Notes under the pieces: model-generated
What the model was told of the DNA's origin: nothing
What the model saw: only the letters and a program-made list of their open reading frames with translations
The model's database searches: none
Made by a program: the position numbers and the translations under genes
In this document: positions 6,960 to 49,911 of the stretch, piece after piece
Numbering within the stretch: the first letter of the stretch is position 1
Layout of the letters: each line of letters opens with the position of its first letter
Assembly (NCBI GenBank): GCA_030390025.1
Contig: CM059430.1
Span: forward strand, 67,766,001-67,830,000
Length of the DNA: 64,000 bases
Reading direction: 5' to 3'
Source of the DNA: Squalus acanthias
Lineage: Eukaryota

Positions 6960-8336
6960 TCCAGAAAGGAGGGTTGTGAAAACAGGAAACTACAGGCCCG
7001 TTAGAATGACATCAGTTGTCGGGAAAATGCTGGAATCCTTAACGAAGTGGTAACAGGACATTTAGAAAATCATAATGCGATTAGGCAGAATCAACATGGT
7101 GTTGTGAAAAGAATATCGTGTTTAACAAACTTATTAGAGTTTTTTGAGGATGTAACTAGCAGAGTAGAAAAAAAGGGAACCAGTGGATGTAGTATATTTG
7201 GATTTCCAAAAGGCAGTCAATAAGGTGCCACATAAAAGGTTGTTACGCAAGATACGGGCTAATGGGGTTGCGGGTAATATATTAGCATGGATAGAGGATT
7301 GCATAACGGACAGAAAACAAAGGGTCAGGATAAATGGGTAATTTTCAGGTTGGCAGGCTGCAACTAGTGGGATGCCGCAACGATCAGTGCTTGGGCCTCA
7401 GCTATTTATCATTTATATTAATGACTTAGATGAAGGGAACGAGTGTAATGTTACCACGTTTGCTGACGATACAAAGGTAGATGGGAAAGTAAACTGTGAG
7501 GAGGACACAAAGAGCCTGCAAAGGGATGTTTTAAAATTCGTACATGGGAAGTGCGTGGCGCTGGCAAAGCCAGCATTTCCTGCCCACCCTTAATTGCCCT
7601 TGAAAAGGTGGTGGTGAGCCACCTTCTTGAACTGCTGCAGTCCGTTTGGTGAAGGTACTCCCACAGTGCTGTTAGGGAGGGAGGTCCAGGATTTTGACCC
7701 AGCGACGATGAAGCAATGGTGATATACTTCTAAGTCAGGATGGTGTGTAACTTGGAGGGGAACTTGCAGGTGACGGTGTTCCCATGCGGCTGCTGCACTT
7801 GTCCTTCTAGGTAGTAGAGGTTGCGAGTTTGAGAGGTGCTGCGGAAGAAGCCTTGATAATTTGCGGCAGTGCATCTTGTCTATGATACACTCTGCAGCCA
7901 TGGCGCGCTGGTGGTGGAGGGAGTGAATGTTTAAGGTGGTAGAAGGGGTGCCAATCAAGCGGGCTGCATTGTCCTGGATGGTGTCGAGCTTCTTGAGTGT
8001 TGTTGGAGCTGCACTCATCTAGCCAAGCAGAGAGTATTCCATCTCACTCCTGACTTGTGCCTTGTAGTTGGTGGATATAGACAGGTTAAGTGAGTGGTCA
8101 ATAAGGTGGCAGATGGAGTATAATGTGGGGAAATGTGAGATTATTCACTTTGGTAGGAAGAATACAAAAACAGAACATTTTTCAAATAGTGAGCAACTAT
8201 TACATGTTGGTGTTCAGAGAGATTTAGGTGTCCTCGTACAGGAAACACAGCAAGTTAGCATGCAGATACAGCAAGCAATTAGGAAGGCAAATGACATGTT
8301 CGTCTTTATGACAAGGGGGCTGGAGTATAAGAGTAA
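6960..8336 (+). mobile_element. CR1 RT fragment interrupted by another LINE
   Basis: NYRPV, QHG, PQRSVLGP, FADDTK. It resumes after the 7527-8067 insert with DIDRLSEW. Confidence 0.85.
7527..8067 (-). mobile_element. 3' end of a second LINE family (CR1/L2-group RT C-terminus)
   Basis: ORF SAAPTTLKKLDTIQDNAARLIG...HSLHH...SWTSLP...FKKVAHHHL. Related shorter pieces lie at about 11040-11320, 40846-41050, 59740-59995 and 60870-60980. Confidence 0.75.
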
Positions 8337-9590
8337 GAAACATAAGAACATAAGAACACAATAAATAGGAGCAGGAGTAGGCCATTTGGCCCCTCGAGCC
8401 TGCTCCGCCATTCAATAAGATCATGGCTGATCTGATCTTGGCCTCAACTCCACTTTCCCGCCAGCTCCCCATAACCCTTGCCTCCCCTGTAGCTCAAATA
8501 TCTGACTATCTCCACCTTGAATATATTCAATGACTCCGCCACCACAGCTCTTTGGGGTAGAGAATGCGAAAGATTTATGCCCCTCTGAGAGAAGAAATAG
8601 CTCCTCATCTCCGTTTTAATTGCCGACCACTTATTCTGAAACTATGCCCTCTAGTTCTAGATCCCCCCACGAGGGGAAACATCCTCCCTGCATCTACCCT
8701 GTCAAGCCCCTTCACAATCTTATATGTTTCAATAGATCAAGTCTCATTCTTCTAAATTCTAATGAGTATAGGCCCAACCTGTTCAACATTTCTTCAAAGA
8801 ACAACCTCTTCATCTCAGGAATCAAACTAGTGAACCTTCTCTGAACTGCCTCCAATGTAAGTATAGCCCTCCTTAAATAAGGAGCGAAAAACTGCACACA
8901 GTACTCCAGATGTGGTATCACCAGCGCTCTGCATAGTTGTAGCAAGACTTGCATATTTTTGTACCCCATTCGCCTTGCAATAATGGCCAACATTCCATTT
9001 GCCTTCCTAATTACGTGCTGTACCTGCATGCTACATTTTAATGTTTCATGTACGAAGACTCCTGGATCCCTCTGTACCGCAGCATTTTGTAGTCTCTCTC
9101 CATTTAAATAATAATTTGCATTTTTATTCTTCCTACCAAAGTGGATAACCTCACATTTTCCCACATTATACTCCATCTGCCAATTTTTTGCCCACTCACT
9201 TAACCTATCTATATCTCTTTGCAGATTCTTTGTGTCCTCCTCACAACTTGCTTTCCCACTTGTCTTTGTATCATCAGCAAATTTTGCTACAGTACACTCG
9301 GCCCCTTCATCCAAGTCATTAATATAGATTGTAAATAGTTGAGGGCCCAGCAATGATCCCTGTGGCACCCAACTAGTTACAGTTTGCCAAACTAAAAATC
9401 ACCCATTTATCCCGACTCTCTGTTTTCTGTTAGTTAGCCAATCCTCTATCCATGCTAATGTATTGCCCCCAACCCCGTGTTCTCTTATCTTGTGCAGTAT
9501 CCTTTAATGTGGCACCTTCTCGAATGCCTTCTGGAAATCCCAATACACTACTTCTATTGGTTCCCCTTGATCCATCCTGCTCGTTACATC
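8337..9590 (-). mobile_element. CR1 LINE 3' fragment
   Basis: 218-aa RT ORF (PQGSLLGP, FADDTK) and a (TTCTTATG)n tail at 8337. Confidence 0.9.
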
Positions 9591-9594
9591 CTCA

Positions 9595-10205
9595 AAGCAA
9601 GTTTTGTTATAATTATACAGGCCTTTGTTGCAACCACACCAGGAGCACTGTCTACAATTTTGGTCTCCTCATCGGAGGAAGGATATAATTGCCTTAGAGG
9701 CAGTGCAACAAAGGTTCACTAGATTGATTCCTGGAATGAGTGTGTTGTCCTCTGAGGAGAGATTGAGTAGATTGGGCCTCTACCCTCTGGAGTTTAGAAG
9801 AATGAGAGGTTATCTCATTGAAAGTTATACGATTCTCAGTGAGATTGTCAGGGTAGATACTGAGACGTTGTTTCCCCTGGCTGGAGAGTCTAGAACTAGG
9901 GGGCATAATCGCAGGATAAGGGGACGGCTATTTAAGACTGAGATGAGGAGGAATTTCTTCTCTCAGAGGGTAGTAAATCTTTGGAATTCTCTAACCTCAT
10001 TTGGCTGTGGATTCTGAATCGTTGAGTATATTCAAGGCTGAGATAGATAGATTTTTGGACTCTGGGGGAATCAAGGGATATGGAGATCGGGCGGGCAAGT
10101 GGAGTTGAGGTCGAAGATCAGCCATGATCTAATTGAATGGTGGAGCGGGCTCGTGGGGCCGAATGCCCTACCCCTGCTCCTACTTCTTAAGTTCTTATAT
10201 CTTGT
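9595..10205 (+). mobile_element. CR1 LINE 3' fragment
   Basis: VQQRFTRLIPG, TRGHN, FFSQRVVNLWNSL and the 3'UTR/tail. Confidence 0.88.
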
Positions 10206-12642
10206 GATCTTATGGGGTATTTTACGTTATGGGTTATTTGACTCTTTTTACTCTCTCTTTCTCTCTCTCAGACACACACTCTGTAGCTGCAGTTTGTGAA
10301 GTGAAATTGGGTGTCCAACCACGTTGAACTTCTATTTTTGGACCTACAGATGGATTCACTCTGACATCGCTATTGTTTGTGAGCCATCTTTAGGTTTCTA
10401 GTAAATTAAAAAAGTGCTTATCTGTGATAGTAACGATGGGGTCTGAATGCACCCTCACATTACTTGGACTTCACTCGTAGTTGGATGCAAATTCAGTGCA
10501 GTATCAATCCTGGTGTACAAAATGTGCATGTTTAAAGAGGAAGAGCTGCTCCTTGTCAAGCTTCTTGAACGCTCGAATATTTTAATAGTTGCAAGTGCGC
10601 TCTGCCCAAGACAGTATCCAGCCGCACCCAGCTCTCTCCTGGACCTGACTGCTACCAGTCGAGGGCCAAACAATATAAACTTCGGTCTGCCTGGCAGACC
10701 AGAAGTAGAGCTATTACTCTAAGGTCGGTTGCTGCATTGTAAACAAACAGTTCAATAAAATAAAATATGTATTATCTTTAATTCTTATTTATGGCTTCAG
10801 TTGTGCAGCAAGGGTGAAGTTAGGGTGCAGATACATCTAAACCTTTTGAACATTTAGCTTCATCTGAAAGACCACTTGGTCCATCCTAGCTCAGCCATCC
10901 AGAAACCTACATTTCCCCATTAACAACATTTAAATATCTCTTAAATGATTTCAGATGGTTGTCCTCACATGATTACCCAAGTCCACTTCCATTATCGATC
11001 AGTCTCTGTCTGAAGAAAAGCTTTTCCATTTCTGTTCTCGGAATGGGGGTGACATCTGCAAAGCTGCATTTATTACCCATTCCTAGTTGCCCTATACAAA
11101 GTGGTGGTGGGCCTTTTCTTTAACTGCTGCAGTCTTTTGCATAGTTTGGTAGAGTCTTCTTGGATATTGACCCAAAGATTATGAAGGAACGGCGACGTAT
11201 ATCCAAGTCAGGATGGCGTGTGACTTGGAGAAGAACTTGGAGATGATTATGTTCCCATGACGTTGCTGTTCTCATCCTGCTCGTTGGGAGAGGTCAAAGA
11301 GCTGGGATGTGTTGCCCAATAAGAGCTTCCTTATATCAGTCCTACATTGGCTTGCGCCCCGGTAGTCGGACAAAGCGTTTGGAACACGACCGTCAACAGC
11401 GTGACTTTTAGACTTTTAGACAGTCCGCCTGAAATTTAATTTAACACTGTATTTTCGTTTATTTGAAATAAACATCTGGAGCTGAGAACTGTAAGATATA
11501 TGAGTCCTACATGGGTAGAATTGATTTAATAAATGCATAACGTGATGAAGTCTACAGCAGGACGCGTCTTGCAACGGGGGTGTGATATCGCTATCTCAAG
11601 ACACAATTCAAGACTCGGGCTTCCTAGAGTTGTACAGACATGAATGTTATTAACCAACAGATTATTCCGTGTGCACATTATGACAATAATTTTTTTATAG
11701 AATTATTTCGGGAAAGGAAGTTGGTGGCAAGGTTTTTCGTGGGTGATTAAGTGCACTATAATTAACAGTGTTCATGATCTCCAAGCTCACTTTCGAGCCA
11801 TGCAGTTATTTTCTCCTCAACAGCTCCGGACTGTCTGTAAAGTCAATGTCGTCAAGATTTGAACAGGCCCCCATATCGAGAGAGATTCTGATATCTCTGA
11901 CACTCGTGGACAGAACAACAGAAAAGCCTTCATATCTAACAGTTCTTCTCATTCTCATCTGCAGCCTCTCAGTCCCTCACACCATTGCTTTTCCAAACGT
12001 TTCCCTCTTTTCCTACTAAACTGCAAACATGTCTTCCAGCTGGCCCTTCCTCATTTCTGCTCCCTCAAACAATTGAATTCAAGAATTATTCCTTCTGAAG
12101 ACCTCCAAATCGTCAGGATTTCAAAAGCTCTGCTTGCCACTATTAATCACTGCCTCCTGATTTAGCTTGTTTTCCATCTTACACTTTTCAACCTCAAAGG
12201 TGACCATGTCCGGACAACTTGGTTTCTAAATTTAAAAGAAGCTGAAATGCTGGATGTATGTGGCATTTTGTTTGAAACATTACGGCCCTTTCTGTCACCA
12301 TTTCAGACGCTCATAAAACACATCAAATTGCATTGGACAGCTCAATTGCTCTGGTCAATTATGTTCTCAAGTAGAACATTATAAAACTTAAAGATATTTT
12401 TCAACAGATACACGGGTCTGAGATTGCCTTGAAATGACATTGGGTGGTGTGATGAGGCTCTAATCTACATGAAGCACACACCTTCATTTCACTGCTGAAC
12501 TCGGCCGTTGGCACCAGTCACAGGCGTGTAGTCTCACACGTCACTGTCTCACAATTCACATCAGGTTATGCACAGCGTTATTTCCCCAAACTATTAGAGC
12601 TTCGTGTTTGTTGTCTTGGAACGGCTAGCATCCATCACTGAA

Positions 12643-12697
12643 ATGTCTATGAGAGCTGTACGTCGGAGCATACAGTTCATGGGGATTATTTTCATAG
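12643..12697 (+). CDS. IgSF receptor exon 1, leader/signal peptide (MSMRAVRRSIQFMGIIFI)
   Basis: ATG at 12643, basic then hydrophobic residues, phase-1 donor G|GTATTT. It joins in frame to V exon (V-AADTPFEVTQ) across a 102-nt pyrimidine-rich intron. Confidence 0.75.
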
Positions 12698-15600
12698 GTA
12701 TTTTCTTTAGCTCGCTCTTTGTCTTTATGTTTCTCTCTCTCTCTCAGAATCTCTCTACGAGTTTTTTATAACTGTAATAAATGTTCATTTTCTTAATAGT
12801 TGCTGCCGATACTCCGTTTGAAGTAACCCAAGCCCCTGAAAATACCAATTCGGTCGCTGGTACAAACATTGTCTTCAATTGCACATTTCCTGTTTTGCAA
12901 GGCGATTCAGTTGTGAATATTTATTGGTGGAAACTTGGCGAAAATGAATTGATAAAACTAGGCTCAGACACCAGGAAACGATTTCTTACTGAGAAAGGAA
13001 GAGCCTCCTTCCAGCTCCGGAATATCAGTTTCCAGGACTCTGGAGTTTATCACTGCGGAGTGACACATCGGGGAAACAGGAAAGCAAATGGAAGCGGATC
13101 AAAGCTTGTCGTCAGTGGTAAGAACATTTTAAAGAGCGTATCGGCGGTATAGTCTCACAGTTATTCAAAATAAATAATGAGGTATGGCATGCCCCACTCT
13201 TCCTCGTGTTGCTTTAACATTTACATTAGAAATCAAAGGCTTCAATTATAGAGATTCTAGTTATAAAATACAACACATCTGTGTGCTTTTTAAAAACCAT
13301 TTTGACCGTTTTATTAATAATTAGTTTTGTTATGTCATGCTTGTAAGCTTGCGCAGGAAGCGTTGTCATGCCATACAGGTGCGAATACAAATTGTGATAA
13401 CTTGAAAGGTTTTCAGTATAAATAACATTTTGATTAGCCTTATTTGAATATATCCTGAACTGTTTAAAGCTGCAGGTAGATGACCATCTAAACTATCACA
13501 CTAAGCGTGATGTTATCGAGTATAAAGTCTAATTTCAATTATAACATGTACACAGAAGTTAATCCACGTGATTATTTTTAAATGTTGTGTCCCCGCTCTT
13601 GCTGCGATAAATAAGAAAGAACTTGTACTTATGTAGCGCAATTGGTGTCCCAAAGCGTTTTACAATGTAGTTGAAATGCTTTTGAAATGTAGTCACTGTT
13701 TAAATGTAGGAAAACGTGGCAGCCAATGTGCACATAGCAATGTCCGACAATGGGATAATGACTAGATCATTAATGATGGTGCTTGAAGGATAAATATTGG
13801 CCAGGACATCGGCACAATTTCCATGCACTTCTTCGAATAGTGCCGTGGGATATTTTATGTTCGCCTGAGAGGGCAGAGGGGCCGAGGTTTAATATCTTAT
13901 CCAAACATCCCTTCGACAGTGTAGCACTTCCTCCGTAATGCACTGAAGGGTCAGCCTTGATTATGCCCCGAAGTACCTGGAGTAGAGCTTAGAACTCAGG
14001 AATTTCTTACCAGGAGGCAAAAGTGCTACCACTGAGCCATGGCTGACACTGTGTTCTCTGAGAATGAGAGATCAGAGTATCGGAAGCCTGGGTGTTTTTC
14101 CTGTTCTTCAGTCAATAGCTTCTCTCAGCCTCTGGTCGACGAACCAAAGACTTTTTATCTCCTCAAATCCCTTCAAAAACGAATATGTCATCGATAAAGA
14201 ATGTCGTGAATTTGTCCCTGAGTTGTGCAAAATCCATTCGCCACAGTTCTTATTTTCCAGGTACAAAAGTTTCTCTCACGCTGATGTAACCCGTGAAGTG
14301 GAAGGTTCGCCTTTAGTTATTATCCCTGATTGTGATGTTGTACGTTTATTGTAAACCATACAAGTAATACGAATAAAAAACCCAATGGCTGGAAATATAA
14401 TTCATTTGGTGGACGGGGCTAATTGTGAAAAAATCAGTCTAAGATGCTATGCCGCCGCTGTTTATTTCTCGGGTTACCTCCGTAACAAGACGGGCGATGG
14501 GTGTGGGGATACTCTTCCTCTGCTCACTGTAGGTAGCGACAATGTGTGAGAGCAATCAGAAGGTTTCGTTGGGTCGGGAATAGTAGGCTTAGAAGGCCTT
14601 CACAAACGCACATTCTATTCGCTACAGAGACTGGAGAGCTGATTCAAAAACGCGTTCAAATTGTTCTCAATAACGAGGTAACACTGGAAAGTTCGGTTTC
14701 GAAGTTTTATAGAGGGAGCTATATAAATTGTGAGCATAATGGGCTATAGAACCAGAAGCAACATGAGGGGAAACATACGAAGCGAGTTGTTATGATCTGG
14801 AATGCACTGCCTGAAAGGGTGGACGAAACAGATTCAATAGCATCCTTCAAAATGGAATTGGTTAAATACTTGAAGGGGAACATTTGCAGGGTTATGCGGA
14901 AAGAGCAGTGGAGTGGGATTAATTGGACAGCACTTCCAAAGAGACGGCTCAAGCACGATGGGCTGAGTAGCCTCCATCTGTGCTGTACCCTTCTATGATT
15001 CTATAATCTACAATAATTAAAATGTAATGCTTTCGCTATACCATAAACATACAGATTTATACTTCTCTGATACGGTTGTAGCCGATCTGAAGTCGTATCT
15101 ATTCGACTTCAGAAATTCCAGAATAGACCAGATATTTAACTTTCTTCTTCGACCTGTCACCAGCTCCACCAATTCCCCTGAGGATTGTTTCCAACCCATC
15201 TGAAAGTAATGTATTCGGTTCTTTGGCTCTCGTGTGTGAAATGCCTTCATTTTACCCAGTGGGACTGGCTGTCACTTGGTACAAAAATAATCGACGCATT
15301 GAAACCGGAATACATACTACTAAACAGCTCAGCAGAGCCGGGATGTATGAAGCTTCCAGCTATTTTGAAGAGACACAGCCTGTCCAGGGAGGGACTGTTT
15401 ACGTCTGTTTGGTTTCTCACGTGACCCTCCAGTTTCCAGCTATGGCAATTTACTTGGTTCCAAATTCTAACCCAGGTAGGATGTCACTTTGCTTACAAAA
15501 CGAACGTCTGCCATTAATCTGTCAATGGTTATTTGCCAAACAGGGGAAGATTTCCTTTTTTGATTATTGAAAGGGAAACGTGTAAGAAATTTAGCTACAA

Positions 15601-18600
15601 ATAGGGAACAGTGGAAATTATTCACCATATGATATTTTTGTAAAATCCCATCAATATTAAAAATATTACAATTTAATGTTGATTTCCAGAGCAGTTAGAT
15701 TTCCAGTTTTTGACCTACAACCTCCTCCGGAATGCCTGCAATTGGGCGGAAATTTCAACTTTGGTGGGGCGTAAAACTGGCGGAAAAGGATCGGCCCCGT
15801 TATACACGCCGCCAGATTTTCCGTTCCATTTGTTTTTATACGCCTACTGAAGTTAAAAGTTCTCCCAATACACGTGCACCTCTTCAATTCAGTAAATATT
15901 GCAACCCGGAAAATAGTTCTGTCCAAAATTCTTCTTTTCACATCAGGCCATGTTTATTCATTAATATTGACTCTTCGTTCAAACTGCCCATCTCAAATCA
16001 AATAACCGCTGATTCAGCGCCACATGGTCGAAACGCTATGTAGCTTATTTTGTCCAATAACAAGTCCGTGCCGTGAATATTGAAATTCTTTACTCTGAAG
16101 TGCCAAATGAGGAAGAATTCCGCTGATCGCTCTTTGACAAATATATATATGAACATTTCCTGTGATCGCTATTGCTAGGGAAATGGGAAACATACAAAAC
16201 AAAGTTATGTTGGGTTCCGAATTCTAGCTGCATATTTATTCTTTTCTTCAAATAGTGGCAGTCATTTGGTTTGGAATGAATGGAGAGTTGATGAAACAAA
16301 GGGGCGGCGGGAGAAATTTCTGCAGAGAAATGCAACATGCCGAGACATACCTAACAGAGGATACCTTCGCAAAAGAAGTAACGACATAATCCCACATAGT
16401 GACGAGGGCAATTGTTAATTGAATTAATTAACTACTTAAAACTAAAAATTAAGTTTTATTCTTATCAATAGAAAATACTCTTATTCCGTAGAGTGAAAAA
16501 CAGATACAGAAACTAAAGATCGGTCAGCCTTCCAGAAACATAAAATAAACAGGGGGATAAAATTGATCTTCAGCGATAACGCAAAATGGCCGATAGCGAA
16601 TCAGCAGCCGGTTTTGCACTCCTCGCGCGATTTTCTGTTCTATTAGCCCGTTTTCCGCCGGGCGATAATGTCTCCCACCCGTTTCGTTTAGTTTTAAATA
16701 GGGATAAAACAACTTCCATCAGTTAACAATTTGAGTACCCATGCTCAATTGCTGTAAACAATTGTTCAAATATCAGGTTCCATTTAGGGCTCTGATTGCT
16801 GACGGCATCCTCAACAATGCACAGCTCCATATGTGAATGTTACTTTTATCTGGCAGGTAGTGACAGTACTTCGCCCTCGCCTTATTTACGGATCTTTGGA
16901 TGCGCAGGCTTTGCATTGACGTTTCTGGTGCTGGTGATTATCATTGGAATGTCGTTCAGATTCAGTAACTGTAAAGGTAAGTTATCACCAGATTATTTAA
17001 TTTAAATAAAAATTACAACGAATAGAAAATGCTAGTCAGCATGCAGAGAGGATTGTTCCACGCTATAGTTTACTGGTCAGAAGTTTTGTTGACGCGGGAA
17101 TTGAGCTCAGGTTGGTTGTTGAATTTTGAAATCGATCTGTGATCCTGAAATGCAGCATTTATCTTAGAATGGTATGAACATGAAGATGGATTATAGTCCC
17201 GCTGCGCTACCACCCCACCCCGATCCGAAAATCGTCTCTCTGATCTCCACATGTTTAAATATACTGGGGGATGAACATATCTGAAATTCTTCTCCCTTTT
17301 TTTAGGCAGAAGTGTCAGAGTGTTTATTTTTTGTGGAAAGCAATTTCGCATCATTATTGGTCAACAAGCATCCCACGGCGAAAATCTAGGTTGCGGAATG
17401 TTATGAATTTTTTCGACTTTGTCTCACTATAAATTGGGATCCGCCATACTTGCTGAATCATATCGTGCATCATTCACAATGAAGCTTTGAATGTTGTGTT
17501 TTACTAGGCAGGGAGAGAAAAGATGAAGAAATCAATTGTGTAAGTCTGTAAGTTTAAAACATTTATCTGATTGATGTTTTAAGTGTAATGTGATAATTTT
17601 CTGTTCTGTTGAGAACATTTCAAATCTATTTCAGACTACGATAACACGTTTCTGCACTTTGCCAGTTGGTTACATCAGACTGGGACATCAAAAACTGTCA
17701 ACATGCAGTACTCCCAAGTGAAAGTTGACGCAGAATTCGTACCGAAATCCATTGTCTAGGCACTAAATGCACTCAGTCTGCTCAGATCCTGGAGTAGCGT
17801 ACTTTTTTGTCAGTTACAATACCATGGTCAGGGGACGCTCCCAGTGTATGCCGACTCCGTGGCAGGGTCTAGTGCCCGGTTAGAAAGGGAGGAAATTTGA
17901 GTGAGGCCCCGGGCCGTAGGAGTCTGAAAGCAGCTGACATCAGCAGGCTCCCAAGCCCGGAAAATGGTTTAGTAACTTGGAAAAAGTATACAACTTCACT
18001 TTTAGCGTTCTGTTTGTTTTGATGCTACGCCTTTACCGGCCATCTAGACGGAGGAGAGCAGCCAGACACGGCGCAAATCTAACACAATCTTCATGTGACA
18101 TCACTGCATCTAGATATTGAAAATTCTTCGTTTTGAAAATGGGAGGGAGACCTGGAGCTCCCTCTCTCACCTAATTTACATGAATAGGTCGTGCTGCTGC
18201 TGCTGCTGTCCCTAGATCCCAGCGCAAAGTAATGGGGATCAGGCCCTGTATATTTGGTCATTGTCCCTATTTTCCTGACCAATGCGCCCAAGGACCGGTC
18301 ATTTCACCACGGCAAAAATCTGGAAAGTTAACCTTAAACAAAATTCCCAGCTTTGGGTGTTTTATTCTCAAACATCGATAACCTTTCTTCTGAGATTATT
18401 GGTGTAATGTTTCAATTAGCCACAGTTCTGCACCAGCAATTGTTTTCTGCTCACCCATCCAGGGCAAGTTGCCCACTACAGTTGGAAACCCAGCTTGGAT
18501 TTCTGCAAGGAAATTTTAAAAGGTTGGCCACGAAGATTTGCTGGAGCCAATGGCACAATAGTGAGTGGCCACAGAGTGCGCTGCACCAAATTAATTTGTT

Positions 18601-21600
18601 TGTGTTTTGGTTATGCATCATGTAAATGAGAGTTTTAAATTTATGCCCCAGGCTTTGGGTACTCAAAGTGGGTTGAGGCTGCGTCTTTGAGGCGGATGTA
18701 GTTTTTCAGAGATTTAGGGGGGAATTCAGTATCTTTGCGCCTCCCGTTAGCGACAGCAGATGGCGCTAATGGGGTGCTAGAGCATTATTACTGGGGCGAG
18801 GCAAATCCAGCTCCACACACAAAACCACCCCCCTCCCCCGCAGCGCCGGAACTAAAAGTTATTGCCGGGAACATCAACGCTAGATGGATTGTGATGCCAG
18901 TGAGTGTGCAACGCTCACTGACTTCACAATCTGCAAAATTGATTATCGCCACCGACCTTAGCACCTGGAGGATACAGCGACTGGGAGAGCTGTTGGGAAA
19001 CACCAGGAAGCTGGCTCCAAGAACGTTATTTAAAGCAATCATCACTGATGAGTCACAGCTGTAGGTTAGTGCAGTTTCCATGCTTTATTGACAGTTTCAC
19101 ATCGTGCGACAGTCTTATTCTGTGATTTCAAGGTTATTTAATGTAAAGGGTGTTGTCGCAACTAAAATGTAGCTACATTGATTCTTAAAAAAATAAAACT
19201 GCTACACTTGGTTACATTAATGGGGCTGTACTCGCAGTTGACCTCGCCCTCCAGGATCTATGGTGGAGGGAGAGGAGGCAGCGAGAAAGTCTGGAACATG
19301 TGGCCAGAGGGAAGAGGAGGGCCATCAGGGCTCAAAACAGGAGGCCTATCCATCTGAAGGTATTCCAAGATCACTTCTCCTAGCTCCAATTAAGTGAGGA
19401 GCAGTGTATTGGAAGGCTCCGCGTCCCCAAGGAGGAGGTCACAGAACTCTGCCACCCCAGAGCTCCAGCCTCAGATCAGGGTGACCACGGCTCCTTCAAT
19501 GGCCGCCAAGGTCACCATCAAACTCAATTTCTTCACCTGTGGGTCCTTCCAGTCTGCAACAGGAGACAAAACTAACATCGCGCATATTGCCATCCATCGC
19601 TGCATCCGGGACGTCACAGGGGCTCTCTACAGTAGGAGAAGGGACTACATAATCTTCCCCATCACCAGAGAGAAGCAGGAAGAGCGTGCATATGGCTTCA
19701 TCAGGAGAGTGGGATTCCCCATGGTGCAGTGCACCATTGACTGCACCCATGTGGCTTTGCAGACACAGCATAACAATCCTGAGATTTTCTGTAACCGCAA
19801 AGGCTACCACTCACTTAATGTGCAGTTGGTGCATGACCACAGACAGTGAATCCTCAATGTCAATGCCTGCTATCCTGGCAGCAGCCACAGTGCCTTCAAG
19901 CTGCACCAACATTCTTCCAGCCACCACATCAAGCTCACGGCTGGCTGGTCGGAGGCTCTGGCTATCCGCTCTCCACTGGGTTCATACTCCCGCTCCACAA
20001 CCCCAATACATACATACATAGATACATAGAAGACTCCTGCTCTGCACTCACATAATGAGAGCCGTGCTGCCACCAGGAACATAATCGAGCAGACCATCGG
20101 GGGCTCAAGGAACAGTTCTGCAGCCTTGACTGCTCGGGAGGAGCCCTCCAGTACTCGGCTGAGTGGGTGTTCCATTTTGTGGTGGTCTGCTGCATGCTCC
20201 ACAAATTGTCCGTCATGAAGGCTCAGCCCTGCCACTTTAGGAGGAGGAAGACGAGGACGAGGAGGAAGAGGAAGCCGAGGAGGAGGAGGAACAGGAGCGA
20301 CGGAGGAGGCAGCCACTCAATCGGCCTTCTGGAAGGGTGGTCTGTGACCACCTCATCAGAATGCAAATGAATTTAACACCAGATCCCCGTTGCTCAGCAC
20401 ACCCCCAACATTGAATTCCTGTTGCAGGCCATATCACAGCGCAAACCTGAAATGAGAGACACCACAAAAGAATCCAAACTGAATTAATAAATTTATCAAT
20501 AATTAGTGAACACATATTTACAACAAAATATTGGCCCTGATTTTCCGAATGGAGGCTTTCAGCGGGCGGATGCCTCCAATCAGAATAAAATCTATGAACC
20601 TACCTGCTGGTTTCATAGATCCCGAGGCTTCCGATCCTGGGTCTCTCCTGTTGAAATGCGCAGAGGCCCACGTATCCCAGGGGTGCATGCGGTTCCCAAT
20701 TGCCCCTGGGATCATGTGGGCCAGGCGAACCAATCAAAGAAGGGAATCCCCCTTCATACTTTTGACAGGTCTGTAGGGATAGAACTGTCAAAAATACGAA
20801 TGGGTATCACATTTTAAAACTCACTAAAACAGTAAATAAATTTAAAAATAACTACATAATTAAAATTAATTAAAATTTCATGTAATTAAGTTTTTTTTTA
20901 ATTAATTGTTTTGACCAAAAAATGTTTTTACGGGTTTAAAAATAAACTTACCTTTGTGAAGAGGATTTTTAATTTATAAATCAGTAATCAAATTAAAATT
21001 TTCTATTTTTCAGCTCTCTTAAGCTGGTAAAACCAGGCCTTATGTCTGCTTTTACCAGGCATAAGAATTCTATGGTATTTCAGTTGGCTGAAGTTGTGCA
21101 AAAAGCGCAACACTCCACCCGCAGAGGCACGTTTCCCGGGCAGGCGGATTCTTGACAGATCGCAAGTGCTGGTTTTCAGCGTATGCACGGGCGGCAGCAG
21201 TCTCGGCTGGTGGGATGACAGGCAGCAACAAGGGCAATGGCGAGTGGCAGTGGTGGGAGCAGGAATGCTGTCATCCTGAGACAGGACAGAAGGTTCCGCC
21301 TCCACTGACCGACTGCCACTCCTCTTGGGCAACACCTCAGCATCCTCAGCAATCTTTTGGAGCAGATTGCTGGCCTGCTGAGACACTGTGGAAGCTCCGG
21401 TTGACGGTGGTAGACCCAGCCACGATGGCAGCAGTCAGAGCTTGCGTGGCATCAAGCTGAGACTGAATGATAGCAGTCTGAGAAAGAAAAAAAGACTTGC
21501 ATTTCGATAGTCACTTTCACGTCAACTGGACATCTCAAAGCCCTTTTTTTTCCAACTAAGTACTTTTTGAAGTGTAGCTACTGTTGTAATATAAGAAATG

Positions 21601-21907
21601 AGGCAGTCAATTTCTGCACAGCAAGTTTTCACGAACAGCAACGTGATAATGAACAGATAATCTGTTTTAGATATATTGATTAAGGGATAAATATTGGCCA
21701 CGACAGCAGGGACAATTGGCCTGCTCTTTTTCGAAATAGTGCCATGGGATCTTTCACGTCCACCTGACAGAGCAGAGGGGGGGGGGGAGGGCTCGTTTTA
21801 ATGTCTCATCTGAAAGATGGCACCTCTGACAGTGCAGCACTCGCTCAGTACACTACTGTTGTGTCAGTCTAGATTTTGTGCTCAAGTTCCTGGAGTGGGA
21901 CTTGAAC

Positions 21908-21940
<33 letters not shown>

Positions 21941-24147
21941 ACCACTGAGACACAGCTGACACTTTCATTGGATGCCACCAAGCATAGACTGCATTACAGC
22001 ACTAACACGTAGCGTCGCTTCTGCCTGTGCTGCAGTGGAAGCTGCCAGATCACCCAGCACATATGGCATCAGGTCTGGGTCGCCACGGTCAATCTGGAAG
22101 TCCATCATCCTTTGCAGACTAGAAATTATGGGCTCCATGGTGTGTGCAGATCTTTGTGCAGTGTTGGAAGCAGAGTCCTTCACGTTCTCTATCACTGCCA
22201 AGAGGCTCTCAGGCACCCTTGTCATTGCACCTATCATCTCTGTGTGCATGCCCAACACCCTTCTTCTTAGCGCCTCCCTATCAAGGTCCTCATCTGAGTC
22301 CTTATAAGCGGAATTCGCCCTCTGGGGAGCTGAACCACGAGCTACCCTTTCGCCCTGGCCTTGCTGCAGCTTGCCCGTCCCCGGTGCCTCACCCTGTGCA
22401 CATCCCGCTACTATCCTTGCCTCTAAAGAATGCGTAATGCCAGTATCTGAGCTGGTGCCTGCGGATGAGACATGCAGTGACACAGGGTGTTATTCCGCTT
22501 CCTCATCACCCGCCCCGCTCTCTATGGTGCCCTCAGGGACAGGCTGCTCAGGTGCTTGCTCATTATCTGAAAGCATAAAGACACAAGAGTCAGGTTACGG
22601 TGAGGGGAGGGGGGCAGGAACGGAGAAATGAATGCATACAGCATGACTAGCTGCAAAGTGCAAAAGGCTTGTGGGGTGAGGTGGAAGAGGGATGTGAGAA
22701 GAAGGAGTATGGAGGAACATACCGCTGTTGTCCCCAAGGGGTCAACGTCGCCAGTTGCCATGACGCCCACTACCTAGCACCCAATAATCTCCAGCACTCT
22801 ATTTTCCAGCGCAGACAGTGTGTCGACTTGGCCCCCGCCTGTGCGACCCTGCTCCCTCCTGTTGTGAGCCATCTTGGCCTGCAAGAGAAAGGAAAGTGTG
22901 TGAGTGAATGTGGAGCAATGTGTTTGGGTGATATGCCTGCCATATTTGAATAGCTGTCATTGTGTGTAAGGTGTGAGATGTGGGTGAGAGTTTTGGTAGG
23001 TAGAGATTGTTGATGGGTGAGTGCTGGGGTGTGGTGCTTTGGCCACTGTGTGCAGACTGTGTCCCAGACGGTGGTATGTAGCATTTGTTGAGGCATTGAC
23101 TCACACTGACCACCTGCGTGAGGTACTTAAATTTCTTTCAGCACTGTGTATGGGTGCTGGGGACCACAGTGCTGCCTGACAACTCATGGGCAACCACCCT
23201 CCACATGGCATGGAAGCCTTGCGGCGAGCGCTTCCTGCCACTTGCTGGGTAGCGCACCAACCTCTGTCTCTCCACAGCAGACATCAACTCCTCCTATGCT
23301 TGGTCGGAAAATCTGCGGCCTCTCTCTCTGGGGCGTGGTTCTGCCATGAGCACAGCTGATTGAGTCGTCCAGCTCCTTGGACTTGGCTTGCTCCTGTTTG
23401 CTCACACAGGTTCACAGGCAGCAATGCTGAGAATGAGGTTCTGCAGCATGAATGACCCTCCCCTTTAAGAACTGGAAATAGCCTGTGGCAATGATGAATT
23501 GCAATTAGACGGCACCTGATATTGGTTAGAGTTTTGAGTGTAACGCCACTGAGCTAGCCCATTAGCATTTGATTTAGCGCTCCCATCCTTTCTTTGACCG
23601 ATGACATTGAATTTTGAATGCAGCAAGATTCCTTAGCACCTGGCGCTAAATCTCAAACTTTTCCAAAGTTAGCGCCCATTCCTGGGCTAAAATAAATTTC
23701 TTCCCCTATGATTCTAACACTGTATCAAACATGTTGCCTGTGAAACTGTGGATGCAATGGGCATTAAATACTGCATAATGTGGACAATGTCTTGATGATT
23801 ATTAAACTATATTAACAACATTATGGAATTGGGATTTTCTATAGCTTTACTTGAAAATAACTTATTATAGGGGAATGAATGTTATGTAAATAAAATTGCT
23901 TGAGGTAAGTAGCTAGCCCAATAATATACATATATTAATCTAAGGAATATTCAAATATCATCATGATCTTACTCTGTTTTATAAAGCATTCTGAAAATTA
24001 ATGAAGTTAATGCGATAACTTTACAACACATTGCTTTTATAGACCTTGCAAGAAGCTGTTGATAACCCGCTGACGTACGCAACCGTCGTTTTGCTTAGTT
24101 CTGAGAAAAATGGAAAATCTAGAAGGAAGGTAAAGTGCACAGAATAA
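12643..24147 (+). CDS. Ig-superfamily type I membrane receptor, VJ-C1-TM-ITIM (non-rearranging, antigen-receptor/NKp30/SIRP-like); 6 exons, about 313 aa
   Basis: Exons 12643-12697, 12800-13117, 15164-15475, 16857-16976, 17508-17539 and 24043-24147 all have GT/AG boundaries and join in frame (intron phases 1,1,1,1,0; 942 nt). One domain per exon with phase-1 introns is typical of IgSF genes. Confidence 0.85.
12800..13117 (+). CDS. IgSF receptor exon 2, V-set domain with germline-joined J-like G strand
   Basis: VTQxP...FNCTF...IYWWK...ASFQLRNISFQDSGVYHC...NGSGSKLVV: canonical Cys, Trp, DxGxYxC and GxG-x-x-L-x-V motifs. Acceptor TTAATAG|, donor G|GTAAGA. Confidence 0.93.
13613..14049 (-). mobile_element. 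tRNA-derived SINE with Deu-type core (IgSF intron 2)
   Basis: On -: GTGTCAGCCATGGCTCAGTGGTAGCAC head, core ATCCCACGGCACTATTCGAAGAAG...GGCCAATATTTATCC, tail GCGCTACATAAGTACAAGTTCTTTCTT. Confidence 0.8.
14720..15005 (+). mobile_element. Old CR1 3'-end fragment (IgSF intron 2)
   Basis: RVVMIWNALPERV...SFKMEL and a CR1-like tail TTCTATGATTCTAT. Confidence 0.7.
15164..15475 (+). CDS. IgSF receptor exon 3, C1-set domain
   Basis: LALVCEMPSFYPVGLAVTWYKN...YEASSYF...YVCLVSHVTL carries the C1 signatures (C-x-x-x-x-FYP, W, YxCxVxH). Acceptor TCACCAG|, donor G|GTAGG, phase 1 on both sides. Confidence 0.93.
16857..16976 (+). CDS. IgSF receptor exon 4, stalk and transmembrane helix
   Basis: GSDSTSPSPYLR-IFGCAGFALTFLVLVIIIGM-SFRFSNCK: about 20 hydrophobic residues with no charged residue. 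Acceptor TGGCAG|, donor G|GTAAGT. Confidence 0.88.
17508..17539 (+). CDS. IgSF receptor exon 5, short cytoplasmic exon (GRERKDEEINC)
   Basis: Acceptor GTTTTACTAG|, donor |GTAAGT. The 32 nt convert phase 1 to phase 0, matching the ITIM exon. Confidence 0.65.
19219..20370 (+). pseudogene. Harbinger transposase pseudogene
   Basis: Homologous to the 50891-52051 protein but broken by stops and frameshifts (ORF pieces 19394-19849, 20167-20370). Confidence 0.85.
20533..21190 (+). mobile_element. GGCCC-ended MITE, 3'-truncated, in the intergenic region of the 18717 Harbinger
   Basis: ATT|GGCCCTGATTTTCCG start and the same internal motifs. The right end is lost with adjacent host sequence. Confidence 0.75.
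21483..21963 (-). mobile_element. tRNA-derived Deu-type SINE inside the 18717 Harbinger Myb gene
   Basis: Head GTGTCAGCTGTGTCTCAGTGGTTAGCAC...GGGTTCAAGTCCC; core and tail as in the 13613 copy. Confidence 0.85.
24043..24147 (+). CDS. IgSF receptor exon 6, ITIM-bearing cytoplasmic tail (TLQEAVDNPLTYATVVLLSSEKNGKSRRKVKCTE*)
   Basis: Acceptor TTGCTTTTATAG|. LTYATV fits the ITIM consensus (I/V/L/S)xYxx(L/V). Stop TAA at 24145-24147. Confidence 0.7.
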   Translation, partial: TLQEAVDNPLTYATVVLLSSEKNGKSRRKVKCTE

Positions 24148-24830
24148 GGACCGTACAAAAAAGTGATGAGCGCCGATCTGCTACACAGAACCAAGATTAA
24201 AATGATATCAATTCTGGATGTAGACGACTTTTACTTCTTTATATTGGCCGGACCTATCCACGTGACATGCAATGTCCTCTGTTTTCATCAACGTCAGTCC
24301 CTAATATAACTCAGAGCAATTTCAACACAATATTACATCTAAAGCTTCAACGAAATAGTATTTATTATAAGGGAATATGATTTGGTAATTTAAATGAGAG
24401 TTGATTGGATTAATTAGATCTTGTGGTCGATTAATACATTATGCTTCCATGACTGTCAATCCAACTGTAAAAACTGTTCTAACATTGCTTAGAAGTAGCC
24501 AAAAGAAACGGGCAACCTCATTTTTTCAGAGGTTCTATTCAACGTCAATATCTATTTCTTCCCAGGGACAATTCATTTCAAGACTGGTATAAAAAATTAA
24601 ATATTCTGCAGTCTGTCATAAAAAAAGAGTACAGAAGATAAAATATATTTGGGACTCCTCAAAGTGAAAGACTACTATACGTAAAATATGGGGCATCCAC
24701 TTCAGGTATTACTTACTACCAGGTAACATAGCCGGATGTAGCAGACAACTCGTTTTACCCTGTCTCTGAGCGGACAGTATTTCTTCGCCCAAAAACCAGA
24801 TGAGCACTTCCAACTACATAGAATTGCATA

Positions 24831-33900: not shown

Positions 33901-34077
33901 AGCCACAAGATCATACCCATATGTAGTTATTTGTGCCATTAACTCGTCTATTTTGTTACGAATGCTACGTGCATTCAGATAGAGAACTTTCAAATATGTT
34001 TTGTGACACTTAGTTCCTGCTTTTGACCTTTTTATTACTTTACCTTTTACTCCATACTTTCTGCCCCTTCCTGACAC
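30958..34077 (-). mobile_element. 5'-truncated CR1 with nearly complete ORF2, nested in the outer CR1
   Basis: A 694-aa ORF (31993-34077) and a 275-aa ORF (31194-32021) are separated by one small deletion at the FADD motif. Own 3' tail at 30958. ATTTTA duplicated at 30952-57 and 34078-83. Confidence 0.92.
31194..34077 (-). pseudogene. CR1 ORF2p (endonuclease plus reverse transcriptase), single frameshift
   Basis: [47 protein letters not shown]; C-terminal RPHLEYC...TRGH...FTQRVV. Confidence 0.92.
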
Positions 34078-34080
34078 ATT

Positions 34081-44682: not shown

Positions 44683-44835
44683 AAACATACCGTTGTTGTC
44701 CCCAAGGGGGTCAACATCGCCGGTGGCCACGACGTCCACCACCTGGCAATCGACGATTTGAGCTCTCTTTCCTCCAGCTCAGAAAGTGGTTGGGTGTCAG
44801 GTGGTCTCCCGCCTGTGCACTCTTGCTCTATCCTG

Positions 44836-49154: not shown

Positions 49155-49167
49155 TGTTTTGGACATT

Positions 49168-49908: not shown

Positions 49909-49911
49909 AAT

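What the first reader, a model, noticed from the sequence alone, without database searches (positions are those of the whole stretch)
12643..24147. Non-rearranging VJ-C1 inhibitory receptor: an antigen-receptor-chain architecture with an ITIM tail
Seen: one exon encodes both V and a J-like strand (YHC...ANGSGSKLVV), followed by a C1-set exon (FYP, W, YxCxVxH), an uncharged TM and an ITIM (LTYATV). V and J are joined in the germline and I see no separate J segments. Established: C1-set domains are restricted to few families (Ig, TCR, MHC, B2M, tapasin, SIRP and relatives), and germline VJ domains occur in NKp30, SIRP and CD8-type proteins. Inference: this resembles a membrane-bound TCR/IgL-like chain that never acquired rearrangement and signals inhibition. 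It is a candidate relic of the pre-RAG receptor family, or a cartilaginous-fish NK-type inhibitory receptor. It is easy to miss because the last exon lies 6.5 kb away, behind a transposon.
Basis: partly seen in the sequence, partly recalled or inferred. Interest (0 to 1): 0.85.

Follow-up and report, generated by a model that had tools for sequence, protein, structure and literature searches.

The report
Shark SIRP-like VJ-C1 receptor gene
This is a real shark gene for a cell-surface immune receptor built like a single T-cell-receptor or antibody light chain that never rearranges, one member of a large family that public gene predictions show in sharks, rays and chimaeras and for which I found no published study.

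Summary
On the + strand lie a leader exon, one exon encoding a V domain with a fused J-like strand, a C1-set exon, a TM exon, a 32-nt cytoplasmic exon and, 6.5 kb on behind a Harbinger remnant, a tail exon with the ITIM LTYATV.

It is not an orphan:
- V and C1 trees each place it (SH-aLRT 98) in one orthogroup with predicted genes of nine elasmobranch species.
- That orthogroup sits in a family of at least 107 distinct V-C1 proteins, with hits from 16 cartilaginous-fish species. RefSeq names them inconsistently: SIRP-alpha-like, tapasin-related-like, Ig-lambda-like, NCR3LG1-like.
- The bamboo-shark ortholog carries the same exon chain with ITIM.

Corrections:
- There are five coding junctions, not six.
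- A conserved Arg flanks the TM.
- The tail looks eroded. TAA replaces the second motif's Tyr. The ITIM is in frame only from the upstream of two tandem GTAAGT donors.

The nearest named families are Ig light chains and SIRP, about equally. The pre-RAG relic reading is untested. Expression is unshown. Other first-stage notes describe this family on other pieces of this genome. I rate it a new member of a known kind, of moderate interest.

The parts
12643..12697 (+). Leader exon: ATG at 12643, 18 codons plus 1 nt, donor GT at 12698 (phase 1)
   Evidence: Sequence read; splice context. The translation aligns with the leaders of the orthologs (for example P0163).
12800..13117 (+). VJ exon: a V-set domain with a fused J-like G strand (NGSGSKLVV). 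Phase 1 at both ends; in-frame codons 12802-13116
   Evidence: Translation. Pfam V-set 9.7e-9. AlphaFold model mean pLDDT 90.1. 71% identical to P0163. Family-invariant W42, R58, Y83, C85, N96, G97. No RSS-like site in 12000-17000.
15164..15475 (+). C1-set exon (FYP, W, YVCLVSH); in-frame codons 15166-15474
   Evidence: Translation. Pfam C1-set 2e-10. Model mean pLDDT 89.8. Nearest folds are MHC class II beta-2 domains. 82% identical to P0163.
16857..16976 (+). Connecting-peptide and TM exon: a 22-residue uncharged core (IFGCAGFALTFLVLVIIIGMSF) flanked by Arg on both sides
   Evidence: 76% identical to P0163. The outer Arg is R or K in 8 of the 9 ortholog models that have a TM.
17508..17539 (+). 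Short cytoplasmic exon (..RERKDEEINC). Donor A (GTAAGT) at 17540 gives phase 0. A second GTAAGT at 17548 (exon end 17547) would give phase 2. Read-through stops after three more codons
   Evidence: 7 of 10 residues match P0163. Three orthologs have three more residues here (GNS, DKS, GKS).
18715..23707 (.). Harbinger-like transposon remnant with nested repeats, inside the last intron (17540-24042)
   Evidence: blastn against the window: 66-84% identity to copies at 41471-45953, 50982-51993 and 55821-56832. The intact copy at 50894-52120 encodes DDE_Tnp_4, E=1.2e-40.
24043..24147 (+). Tail exon, phase-0 acceptor, 34 codons plus TAA. ITIM LTYATV at 24070-24087. The stop at 24145-24147 is where orthologs have the Tyr of a second motif
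   Evidence: 21 of 34 residues are identical to the tail of P0202, aligned end to end. Orthogroup alignment.
24196..24201 (+). ATTAAA, a possible polyadenylation signal 49 nt after the stop
   Evidence: Pattern scan. Use not shown.

Best explanation
The locus is a real six-exon gene for a type I membrane glycoprotein. It has a signal peptide, one V domain whose J-like strand is encoded in the same exon (so no rearrangement is needed or possible), one C1-set domain, a short stalk, one TM helix and a short cytoplasmic tail.

It belongs to a conserved elasmobranch orthogroup within a large family of VJ-C1-TM receptors found across cartilaginous fishes. Long-tailed members of that family carry an ITIM (LTYAxL/V) followed by a TEYAx(I/V) motif.

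Inferred working: the V domain binds a so far unknown, probably conserved, ligand. In the ancestral form the phosphorylated ITIM and second motif recruit SH2 phosphatases and damp the cell, as SIRP-alpha does.

In this genome the tail is partly eroded. The second motif is cut off by a stop. The ITIM is kept only if the upstream of two tandem donors is used. So this copy is at best a weakened inhibitory receptor.

Shown: exons, domains, orthology, family and tail homology. Inferred: expression, donor choice, phosphatase recruitment and ligand.
For: Gene model and domains:
- Domains and folds.
- Canonical splice sites and no RSS.

Orthogroup:
- V and C1 trees were built separately from 108 rows each. 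Each puts the window exon in the same 10-row group, one model from each of nine other species, with SH-aLRT 98.
- Identity to the Heterodontus francisci model P0163 is 71% (V), 82% (C1) and 76% (TM).
- The Chiloscyllium plagiosum ortholog P0202 (327 aa) has the same chain, including R at the TM edge, LTYATV and TEYAEI. Its tail aligns to the window's last exon end to end, 21 of 34 identical.

Family breadth:
- 397 proteins at E<=1e-3 in the HMMER search.
- 46 of 46 hits and 82 of 83 hits (one unnamed) are chondrichthyan by name or record series, from 16 species across.
- 107 distinct V-C1 proteins in my local set.

Likeness to SIRP:
- The family profile matches SIRP-alpha D1-D2 contiguously at 64.1 bits, plus D3 at 48.9 bits. 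SIRP-alpha ranks 4th of 177,635 distinct PDB sequences.
- SIRP-alpha clusters are the first named look-alikes in the Atlas, score 0.96.
Against: - No transcript evidence. No RNA run holds the stretch. The three runs laid covered only intronic repeats and showed no joint at any exon border.
- Six of ten ortholog models lack the ITIM: P0163, P0201, P0158, P0211, P0153 and P0210. One more, P0200, lacks the TM.
- Relative to three orthologs, the small cytoplasmic exon lacks three residues. The DNA reads as if one base short of their codons, so the downstream, seemingly ancestral, donor would put the ITIM out of frame (frame 1 of the last exon reads PCKKLLITR*).
- The SIRP likeness is no stronger than the likeness to Ig light chains (kappa 69.9 bits, lambda 67.6 bits).
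Confidence: 0.7

Rival explanations
1. This copy is a short-tailed, non-inhibitory member, either activating or a decoy. The transcript ends at or reads through the small cytoplasmic exon, or uses the downstream donor, so the ITIM exon is a vestige of an inhibitory ancestor. The conserved Arg at the outer TM edge could pair with an acidic-TM adaptor, as in activating partners of paired receptor families.
For: - Six of ten ortholog models have short tails without an ITIM, including the closest one, P0163, which stops one residue after the small exon.
- R or K at the TM edge in 8 of the 9 orthologs that have a TM. Long-tailed paralogs mostly have a hydrophobic residue there.
- Two lesions in the tail: the stop at the second Tyr, and the apparent one-base shortfall before the downstream donor.
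- A 5-kb transposon remnant sits in the last intron.
- Across 102 family proteins, a basic residue near the outer TM goes weakly with absence of an ITIM (24/37 against 26/15, odds ratio 0.37, p=0.026).
Against: - Three orthologs (P0202, P0217, P0198) combine the same TM region with an ITIM tail. P0202 and P0217 also have the Arg; P0198 has Gln at that position. So R and ITIM coexist.
- The tail exon is still open for 34 codons, with an intact acceptor and the ITIM identical to the bamboo shark's.
- The Arg lies at the edge of the hydrophobic core, not inside it.
- The test is crude: its window includes juxtamembrane residues.
- Short RefSeq models may be incomplete.
Confidence: 0.3
2. The family is the cartilaginous-fish branch of the SIRP family proper, a true homologue by descent that has lost or never gained the third domain. 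That would move the origin of SIRPs back to the jawed-vertebrate ancestor.
For: - RefSeq's most frequent automatic name for family members is 'tyrosine-protein phosphatase non-receptor type substrate 1-like'.
- SIRP-alpha and SIRP-gamma are the best non-rearranging tetrapod proteins among solved structures (E=1.5e-31 and 5.4e-28). The alignment runs across V and C1 in one stretch, and D3 scores 48.9 bits on its own.
- Atlas look-alikes point the same way.
- Long-tailed members have several tyrosine motifs of ITIM type.
Against: - The window has one C1 exon and no second one, against the two C1 domains of SIRP-alpha.
- Ig kappa and lambda chains score as high or higher.
- No bony-vertebrate protein appeared in two family searches. 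Those searches are limited to word-sharing candidates.
- No synteny is available: the window holds only transposons besides this gene.
- A 2026 survey places the SIRP family's conservation at Tetrapoda (PMC13262535, passage seen).
Confidence: 0.2
3. One reading: the family is a surviving non-rearranging relative of the V-C1 chain that the RAG transposon invaded. On this view it is closer to IgL/TCR than to any innate receptor.
For: - Its architecture is exactly one antigen-receptor chain (L-VJ-C1-TM).
- The family profile scores kappa and lambda light chains highest per V-C1 stretch (69.9 and 67.6 bits).
- RefSeq calls several members 'immunoglobulin lambda-1 light chain-like'.
- Many unchecked first-stage notes say family members lie among Ig light-chain clusters on other pieces of this genome.
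- Published work treats VJ-C1 genes such as UrIg and UrIg2 as such relics (PMC12227049, abstract and passages seen).
Against: - Nothing in this window links it to Ig or TCR genes.
- HMM scores do not separate IgL from SIRP.
- The V model's structural neighbours are a mix of VNAR, NKp30, TCR V, CD79b, VL and PD-L1, all with nearly equal scores.
- The linkage claim rests on unverified notes.
Confidence: 0.12
4. It is a silent pseudogene whose extracellular exons have not yet decayed.
For: - Tail lesions.
- Transposon in the last intron.
- No expression evidence.
Against: - All six exons are open with canonical splice sites.
- V and C1 keep every family-invariant residue.
- End branches in the trees are not long: 0.096 for C1 against a median of 0.11, and 0.18 for V against a median of 0.12.
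Confidence: 0.1

Closest known systems
SIRP family (SIRP-alpha, -beta, -gamma; PTPNS1)
   Same: - N-terminal V domain with a germline J-like strand, followed directly by a C1-set domain, a TM and, in long-tailed family members, several ITIM-type tyrosines.
- The family includes both short-tailed and long-tailed members.
- The family profile aligns to SIRP-alpha D1-D2 in one stretch (64.1 bits) and to D3 (48.9 bits).
- SIRP-alpha clusters are the first named Atlas look-alikes.
   Different: - One C1 domain instead of two.
- No evidence for CD47 binding.
- No synteny data.
- Similarity is no greater than to Ig light chains.
- In the passages I saw, SIRPs are reported only from mammals, birds and lizards, and their origin is called unknown (PMC9652883).
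Ig light chains and TCR chains
   Same: - The same exon plan: L, V(J), one C1.
- The highest per-stretch HMM scores: kappa 69.9 bits, lambda 67.6 bits.
- C1 exon against lambda CL: 25.3 bits.
   Different: - V and J are fused in the germline within one exon.
- No RSS.
- Has a TM and a tyrosine-motif tail.
- No cysteine in the stalk for an interchain bond.
UrIg and UrIg2 (non-rearranging elasmobranch VJ-C1 genes; PMC12227049)
   Same: - A non-split VJ exon followed by C1-type domains.
- Found in elasmobranchs.
- UrIg2 (9dmx_A) is the second-best PDB hit of the family profile, E=2.3e-35.
   Different: - UrIg has three C domains and is secreted. UrIg2 has 9-11 C domains. Both form disulfide-linked dimers (passages seen).
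- Here there is one C1, a TM and an ITIM.
- The V-C1 stretch scores only 53.2 bits, below SIRP-alpha and IgL.
NKp30 (NCR3)
   Same: - A V domain with a germline J-like strand.
- The human NKp30 structure 3noi_A is the second-best Foldseek match of the V model (E=4.5e-9, TM 0.79).
- A basic residue at the outer TM edge of NKp30 is recalled, not tested here.
   Different: NKp30 as I recall it has no C1 domain and no ITIM. The window gene has both. The Foldseek scores of VNAR, TCR V, CD79b and VL are practically the same.
B7 family (B7-H6/NCR3LG1, PD-L1, CD276)
   Same: - V plus C ectodomain and a TM.
- RefSeq names the closest ortholog 'NCR3LG1-like' and some paralogs 'CD276 homolog'.
- PD-L1 V domains match the V exon at about 1e-5.
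   Different: - No B7-family chain is among the 8 PDB sequences at E<=1e-27 for the family profile.
- The C domain here is a clear C1-set.
- No phylogeny was done.
PRARP (chicken MHC-linked non-rearranging VJ genes; Fu et al. 2019) and teleost NITRs
   Same: Non-rearranging VJ-type V domains in innate-type receptors. They are listed together with SIRP, CD8 and NKp30 as joined-VJ IgSF members (PMC11599192, passage seen).
   Different: Not compared. The PRARP paper is not held, and what I know of PRARP and NITR architecture is recalled only.

Membership tests
SIRP family | N-terminal V-set domain with a germline J-like G strand | tested here: met
   V-set 9.7e-9. NGSGSKLVV lies in the same exon. 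It aligns to SIRP-alpha's G strand in the profile alignment.
SIRP family | Two membrane-proximal C1-set domains (V-C1-C1) | tested here: not met
   There is one C1 exon only. tblastn with the C1 exon and with eight family proteins finds no second C1 in the window. The orthologs also have one.
SIRP family | Cytoplasmic tail with paired ITIM-type tyrosines that recruit SHP-1/SHP-2 | tested here: inconclusive
   One ITIM (LTYATV) is present. The second motif is replaced by a stop, and the frame depends on donor choice. Binding is not testable here.
SIRP family | Descent from the same ancestor as tetrapod SIRPs (phylogeny, synteny) | tested here: inconclusive
   SIRP-alpha E=1.5e-31 and SIRP-gamma E=5.4e-28 are among the top 8 PDB hits, but IgL scores as high. 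No reference sequences could be brought into a tree. There are no neighbouring host genes in the window.
SIRP family | Binding of CD47 (SIRP-alpha, SIRP-gamma) | not testable with these tools
   Needs a binding assay.
Rearranging antigen receptors (IgL, TCR) | Separate V and J segments flanked by RSS | tested here: not met
   V and J are in one open exon. There are 0 RSS-like heptamer(<=1 mismatch)-spacer-nonamer(<=2 mismatches) sites on either strand of 12000-17000.
Rearranging antigen receptors (IgL, TCR) | V followed by a C1-set domain | tested here: met
UrIg/UrIg2 | VJ exon followed by three or more C1-type domains; disulfide-linked dimer | tested here: not met
   One C1 exon. No cysteine in the stalk. 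The defining features are taken from PMC12227049 passages.
NKp30 (NCR3) | Single V domain joined directly to stalk and TM, with no C domain (recalled definition) | tested here: not met
   A C1-set exon is present. The V fold resembles NKp30 (rank 2).
Tapasin / TAPBPR (RefSeq names of some members) | Large N-terminal tapasin domain before the Ig domains (recalled definition) | tested here: not met
   Only Ig-type Pfam families hit the exons. The ortholog proteins of 268-327 aa consist of leader, V, C1, TM and tail.
ITIM-bearing inhibitory receptor (functional class) | (I/V/L/S)xYxx(I/V/L) in the cytoplasmic tail | tested here: met
   LTYATV at 24070-24087. It is conserved as LTYATV, LTYAEV and VTYAEV in three orthologs. 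The consensus itself is recalled.
ITIM-bearing inhibitory receptor (functional class) | The motif is part of the expressed protein and recruits SH2 phosphatases | not testable with these tools
   No RNA evidence. Donor ambiguity.
Chondrichthyan VJ-C1-TM family (unnamed; RefSeq predictions) | Family-invariant V residues (W42, R58, Y83, C85, N96, G97), C1 signature (C24, W38, C81, SH), and placement inside the family tree | tested here: met
   (invariant columns include the window exon). (orthogroup of 10 rows, SH-aLRT 98 in both trees).

The most novel reading that the evidence does not exclude
The gene belongs to a family confined to cartilaginous fishes that is the membrane-bound, never-rearranging sister lineage of Ig light chains and TCR chains. 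[quoted passage not shown] It would also be the stock from which tetrapod SIRPs arose. Its paired long-tailed and short-tailed members would then show what a pre-RAG 'antigen receptor' did: germline-encoded recognition with inhibitory and activating signalling.
Probability: 0.12. Interest if true: 0.85.

Novelty: new member of a known kind. Interest (0 to 1): 0.45.

Why it matters
- Non-rearranging VJ-C1 genes are the material from which models of the origin of antibodies and T-cell receptors are built. UrIg and UrIg2 were reported on exactly that ground (PMC12227049).
- This gene shows the minimal antigen-receptor-chain architecture (L-VJ-C1-TM) joined to a SIRP-like inhibitory tail. It has a conserved orthogroup across sharks and rays and sits in a family spanning all three cartilaginous-fish lineages.
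- In the passages I saw, the origin of SIRPs is called unknown (PMC9652883) and the family is placed at Tetrapoda (PMC13262535). A chondrichthyan SIRP-like family therefore makes that question testable by phylogeny and synteny.
- For genome annotation, the family's RefSeq names (tapasin-related, Ig lambda, NCR3LG1, CD276, MHC class II, TCR beta) are mutually inconsistent and should not be propagated.
- The single gene in this window is an ordinary member, and its tail looks partly decayed.

Tried and rejected
- Paralogs in the window: none. tblastn with each exon and with eight family proteins found no second V, C1 or tail exon.
At phase 0 it runs into a stop, the other phases need a non-GT donor, and tblastn with eight family proteins found no match there.
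- Expression: the look-up of sequencing runs listed no RNA holder. The three same-species runs, laid on 12500-18400, covered only repeats in intron 2 and the start of the last intron. They gave no joint at an exon border. This says nothing about absence.
So this step rests on protein alignments only.
- Synteny: the rest of the window holds only LINE and Harbinger copies.
- Activating or inhibitory pairing by TM charge: a crude count over 102 proteins gave only a weak association (p=0.026). Three orthologs have an ITIM tail on this TM region, two of them with the Arg. I therefore did not adopt the activating reading as the main one.
- Structure searches did not discriminate between V families: VNAR, NKp30, TCR V, CD79b, VL, PD-L1 and SIRP-alpha all fall within E=4e-9 to 9e-8.
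- Trees with SIRP, IgL, TCR, NKp30, B7-H6, tapasin, UrIg and PRARP reference sequences were not built. No tool gave me those sequences as stored proteins, and I did not type any from memory.
- Literature: seven full-text searches found no paper that names or characterises this family. Six papers that may bear on it are not held and were not seen: PRARP (Fu 2019), UrIg (2023), Ohta 2019, Ohta & Flajnik 2015, Flajnik 2012, and Dornburg & Yoder 2022. Supplements were closed. The supplementary figures and tables of PMC12227049 and of the genome papers may list such genes.
- No joined exon model was translated, searched or folded.

Full report
**What is there**

Reading the + strand and translating exon by exon gives six coding exons with canonical AG/GT borders and pyrimidine tracts.

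| Exon | Coordinates | Notes |
|---|---|---|
| Leader | 12643-12697 | ATG at 12643 |
| VJ | 12800-13117 | V domain and J-like strand in one exon |
| C1 | 15164-15475 | C1-set domain |
| Stalk and TM | 16857-16976 | 22-residue uncharged core |
| Small cytoplasmic | 17508-17539 | two tandem donors follow |
| Tail | 24043-24147 | ITIM LTYATV; stop TAA |

- The first four junctions are phase 1, as is usual for Ig-superfamily genes. The small exon ends in phase 0 and the tail exon starts in phase 0.
- Pfam calls the second exon V-set (E=9.7e-9) and the third C1-set (E=2e-10). The TM and tail exons match no family.
- AlphaFold models of the two domain exons, each with a family alignment, are confident: mean pLDDT 90.1 and 89.8.
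- The C1 model's nearest solved folds are MHC class II beta-2 domains.
- The V model's nearest are shark VNAR, NKp30 (rank 2), TCR V, CD79b, lambda VL, PD-L1 and, at rank 46, SIRP-alpha. All fall within a narrow band of scores.
- The V exon ends in NGSGSKLVVS, a J-like GxG strand encoded in the same exon as YHC.
- There is no RSS-like signal on either strand of 12000-17000.
- The last intron (17540-24042) holds a Harbinger-like remnant at 18715-23707. An intact relative in the window encodes a DDE_Tnp_4 transposase.

No joined model was translated, searched or folded.

**It is not an orphan**

- An exhaustive HMMER search with the V exon found 397 proteins at E<=1e-3.
- The single-V hits of 260-420 aa that I looked up or whose names were listed are predicted proteins of sharks, rays and the chimaera Callorhinchus.
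- A word-indexed search with one of them (P0002) returned 46 hits, all chondrichthyan.
- A profile of 29 members returned 83 hits. Of these, 82 are chondrichthyan by name or record series and one is unnamed.
- Sixteen species are represented across. In each species the members sit on one chromosome-sized record.
- In my local set, 113 proteins (107 distinct) have the V directly followed by the C1.
- RefSeq's automatic names for them contradict each other: SIRP-alpha-like, SIRP-beta-like, tapasin-related-like, Ig lambda-1-like, NCR3LG1-like, CD276 homolog, PD-L1-like, MHC class II-like and TCR-beta-like.

**Orthologs**

Local BLASTP of each exon against all fetched proteins gives these identities:

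| Model | Species | V | C1 | TM |
|---|---|---|---|---|
| P0163 | Heterodontus francisci | 71% | 82% | 76% |
| P0200 | Cetorhinus | 68% | 80% | not applicable |
| P0198 | Mustelus | 65% | 74% | not listed here |
| P0201, P0158 | Scyliorhinus | 61-63% | 69-72% | not listed here |
| P0202 | Chiloscyllium | 63% | 65% | not listed here |

- Separate maximum-likelihood trees of 108 V segments and 108 C1 segments each recover the same group of ten rows, with SH-aLRT 98. The group is the window exon, six shark models and three batoid models (Pristis, Mobula, Hypanus), one per species.
- The gene is therefore a conserved, apparently single-copy orthogroup older than the shark-batoid split, inside a much larger and more fluid family.
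- These are 'quick' trees on about 100 columns. I lean only on this one starred branch, found twice independently.

**The tail**

- The Chiloscyllium ortholog P0202 (327 aa) carries the full chain. It has R at the outer TM edge, the small cytoplasmic segment, then a tail with LTYATV and TEYAEI.
- The window's last exon aligns to that tail from its first to its last codon, 21 of 34 identical. Tails of long-tailed paralogs align over the same 34 residues at 41-50%. This settles that the distant exon is the family's tail exon and belongs to this gene.

Three things qualify 'inhibitory':

1. The stop TAA stands exactly where relatives have the Tyr of the second motif.
2. Three orthologs have three more residues (GNS, DKS, GKS) between the small exon and the tail exon. 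The window DNA there has two tandem GTAAGT donors, at 17540 and 17548.
   - It reads as if one base short of the orthologs' codons.
   - The upstream donor keeps the ITIM in frame.
   - The downstream donor puts the tail exon in a frame that stops after nine codons.
   - Read-through stops after three codons.
   - This step is inferred from protein alignments only, because ortholog DNA could not be fetched.
3. Of ten ortholog models, three have an ITIM tail, six have short tails without one, and one lacks the TM. Short models may be incomplete or may be true isoforms.

**The TM**

- An Arg precedes it directly (YLRIFGC). This position is R or K in 8 of the 9 orthologs that have a TM.
- Long-tailed paralogs mostly have a hydrophobic residue there.
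- Across 102 family proteins, a basic residue near the outer TM goes only weakly with absence of an ITIM (odds ratio 0.37, p=0.026; a crude window).
- P0202 and P0217 combine the Arg with an ITIM tail. P0198 has the ITIM tail with Gln at that position.
- I keep an adaptor-pairing, activating or decoy role as a rival explanation, not the main reading.

**What it is like**

A profile of 30 family sequences was searched against all PDB sequences. Per V-C1 stretch it gives:

| PDB match | Score |
|---|---|
| Kappa light chain | 69.9 bits |
| Lambda light chain (part of V plus CL) | 67.6 bits |
| SIRP-alpha D1-D2 | 64.1 bits (D3 a further 48.9) |
| UrIg2 V-C1 | 53.2 bits |

- By whole-chain E-value, UrIg2 (2.3e-35), SIRP-alpha (1.5e-31) and SIRP-gamma (5.4e-28) are the only non-rearranging proteins among the eight best.
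- The protein-language-model Atlas gives, after two unnamed V+C1 clusters that may be the family's own, SIRP-alpha clusters (0.96) and then kappa-like light chains (0.95).
- So the family stands about equally far from Ig light chains and from SIRPs. It works most like a SIRP: V-C1 ectodomain, tyrosine-motif tail, long- and short-tailed members.
- It fails the SIRP architecture, having one C1 rather than two. Descent from the SIRP ancestor is untested.
- It fails the defining features of rearranging receptors (no RSS or separate J) and of UrIg/UrIg2 (three or more C domains, dimers). It also fails those of NKp30 (no C domain) and tapasin (large N-terminal domain), as I recall those two definitions.

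**Literature**

- UrIg and UrIg2 are described as non-rearranging VJ-C1 relics of elasmobranchs (PMC12227049: outline, abstract and passages).
- The cartilaginous-fish MHC paper discusses VJ-C1 precursors and names NKp30, PRARP and UrIg (PMC10751288: passages).
- A review states that SIRPs are known from mammals, birds and lizards and that their origin is unknown (PMC9652883: passage).
- A 2026 survey lists the SIRP family under Tetrapoda (PMC13262535: passage).
- Seven full-text searches found no paper on this family. Six possibly relevant papers are not held, and supplements were closed. So 'undescribed' holds only for what I could search.

**Expression**

No RNA run holds the stretch. Contigs of three same-species runs lie only on intronic repeats and show no exon joint. 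Expression is neither shown nor excluded.

**Other notes of this scan**

- First-stage notes report further VJ-C1 receptor genes just before the window and 34 kb beyond it.
- Many notes describe the same family among Ig light-chain clusters on other pieces of this genome.
- All of these are unchecked. This window holds no Ig gene.

**Verdict**

This is a real gene and a correct gene model in essence. It is a member of a known kind: a non-rearranging VJ-C1 receptor with an ITIM, SIRP-like. It belongs to a large chondrichthyan family already present as unnamed predictions. In this copy the inhibitory tail is partly eroded. The family as a whole deserves a proper phylogenetic and linkage study. 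This single locus is of moderate interest.

Noticed in passing
window 46858-52561 and 53500-57000: Two near-identical Harbinger copies. Each has an open 409-aa DDE_Tnp_4 transposase ORF on the minus strand (50891-52120 and 55730-56959; E=1.2e-40 for the first). Each also has long ORFs on the plus strand that could be the Myb-like partner. The element may be recently active.
   Followed up: partly
window 29300-36200: Nested LINE copies on the minus strand. They include a 694-aa ORF (31993-34077) with endonuclease and reverse-transcriptase domains (RVT_1, E=2.6e-23).
   Followed up: partly
window 13680-14075 and 14667-15060 (intron between the VJ and C1 exons): Two short repeats are covered at summed contig depths of about 8,000-17,600 in all three same-species runs, while the exons are not covered. 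They are probably abundant SINE-like elements. One also recurs in the last intron (21565-21963 matches 13680-14050).
   Followed up: no
window 17540-17553: Two perfect GTAAGT donor motifs lie 8 nt apart at the end of the small cytoplasmic exon. The upstream one looks as if it was created by the same one-base shortfall that disturbs the frame of the downstream one.
   Followed up: partly
proteins P0001, P0003, P0009, P0016, P0050, P0067, P0113: The best non-chondrichthyan matches of the V exon are turtle, lizard and snake proteins. P0001 and P0003, whose sequences I read, are tandem VJ-type V domains (HMMER matched 6 and 5 stretches), and P0001 also has a TM. The others match in 3-4 stretches, and P0016, P0050, P0067 and P0113 carry ITIM-type motifs in their C-terminal parts. 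RefSeq or depositors name them 'NCAM2', 'titin-like', 'pIgR-like', 'FcRL5' and 'tyrosine-protein kinase-like otk'. This is a second, reptilian, mis-named family of non-rearranging VJ receptors.
   Followed up: no
family alignment A1: The J-like strand of the family starts with an invariant Asn-Gly followed by Ser or Thr. So the GxG bulge carries a conserved N-glycosylation sequon in all 30 aligned sequences.
   Followed up: no
protein P0158 (Scyliorhinus torazame): This RefSeq model fuses the V domain of a different family member in front of the ortholog's own V. It is probably a read-through of two neighbouring genes, which fits the tight clustering of the family.
   Followed up: no
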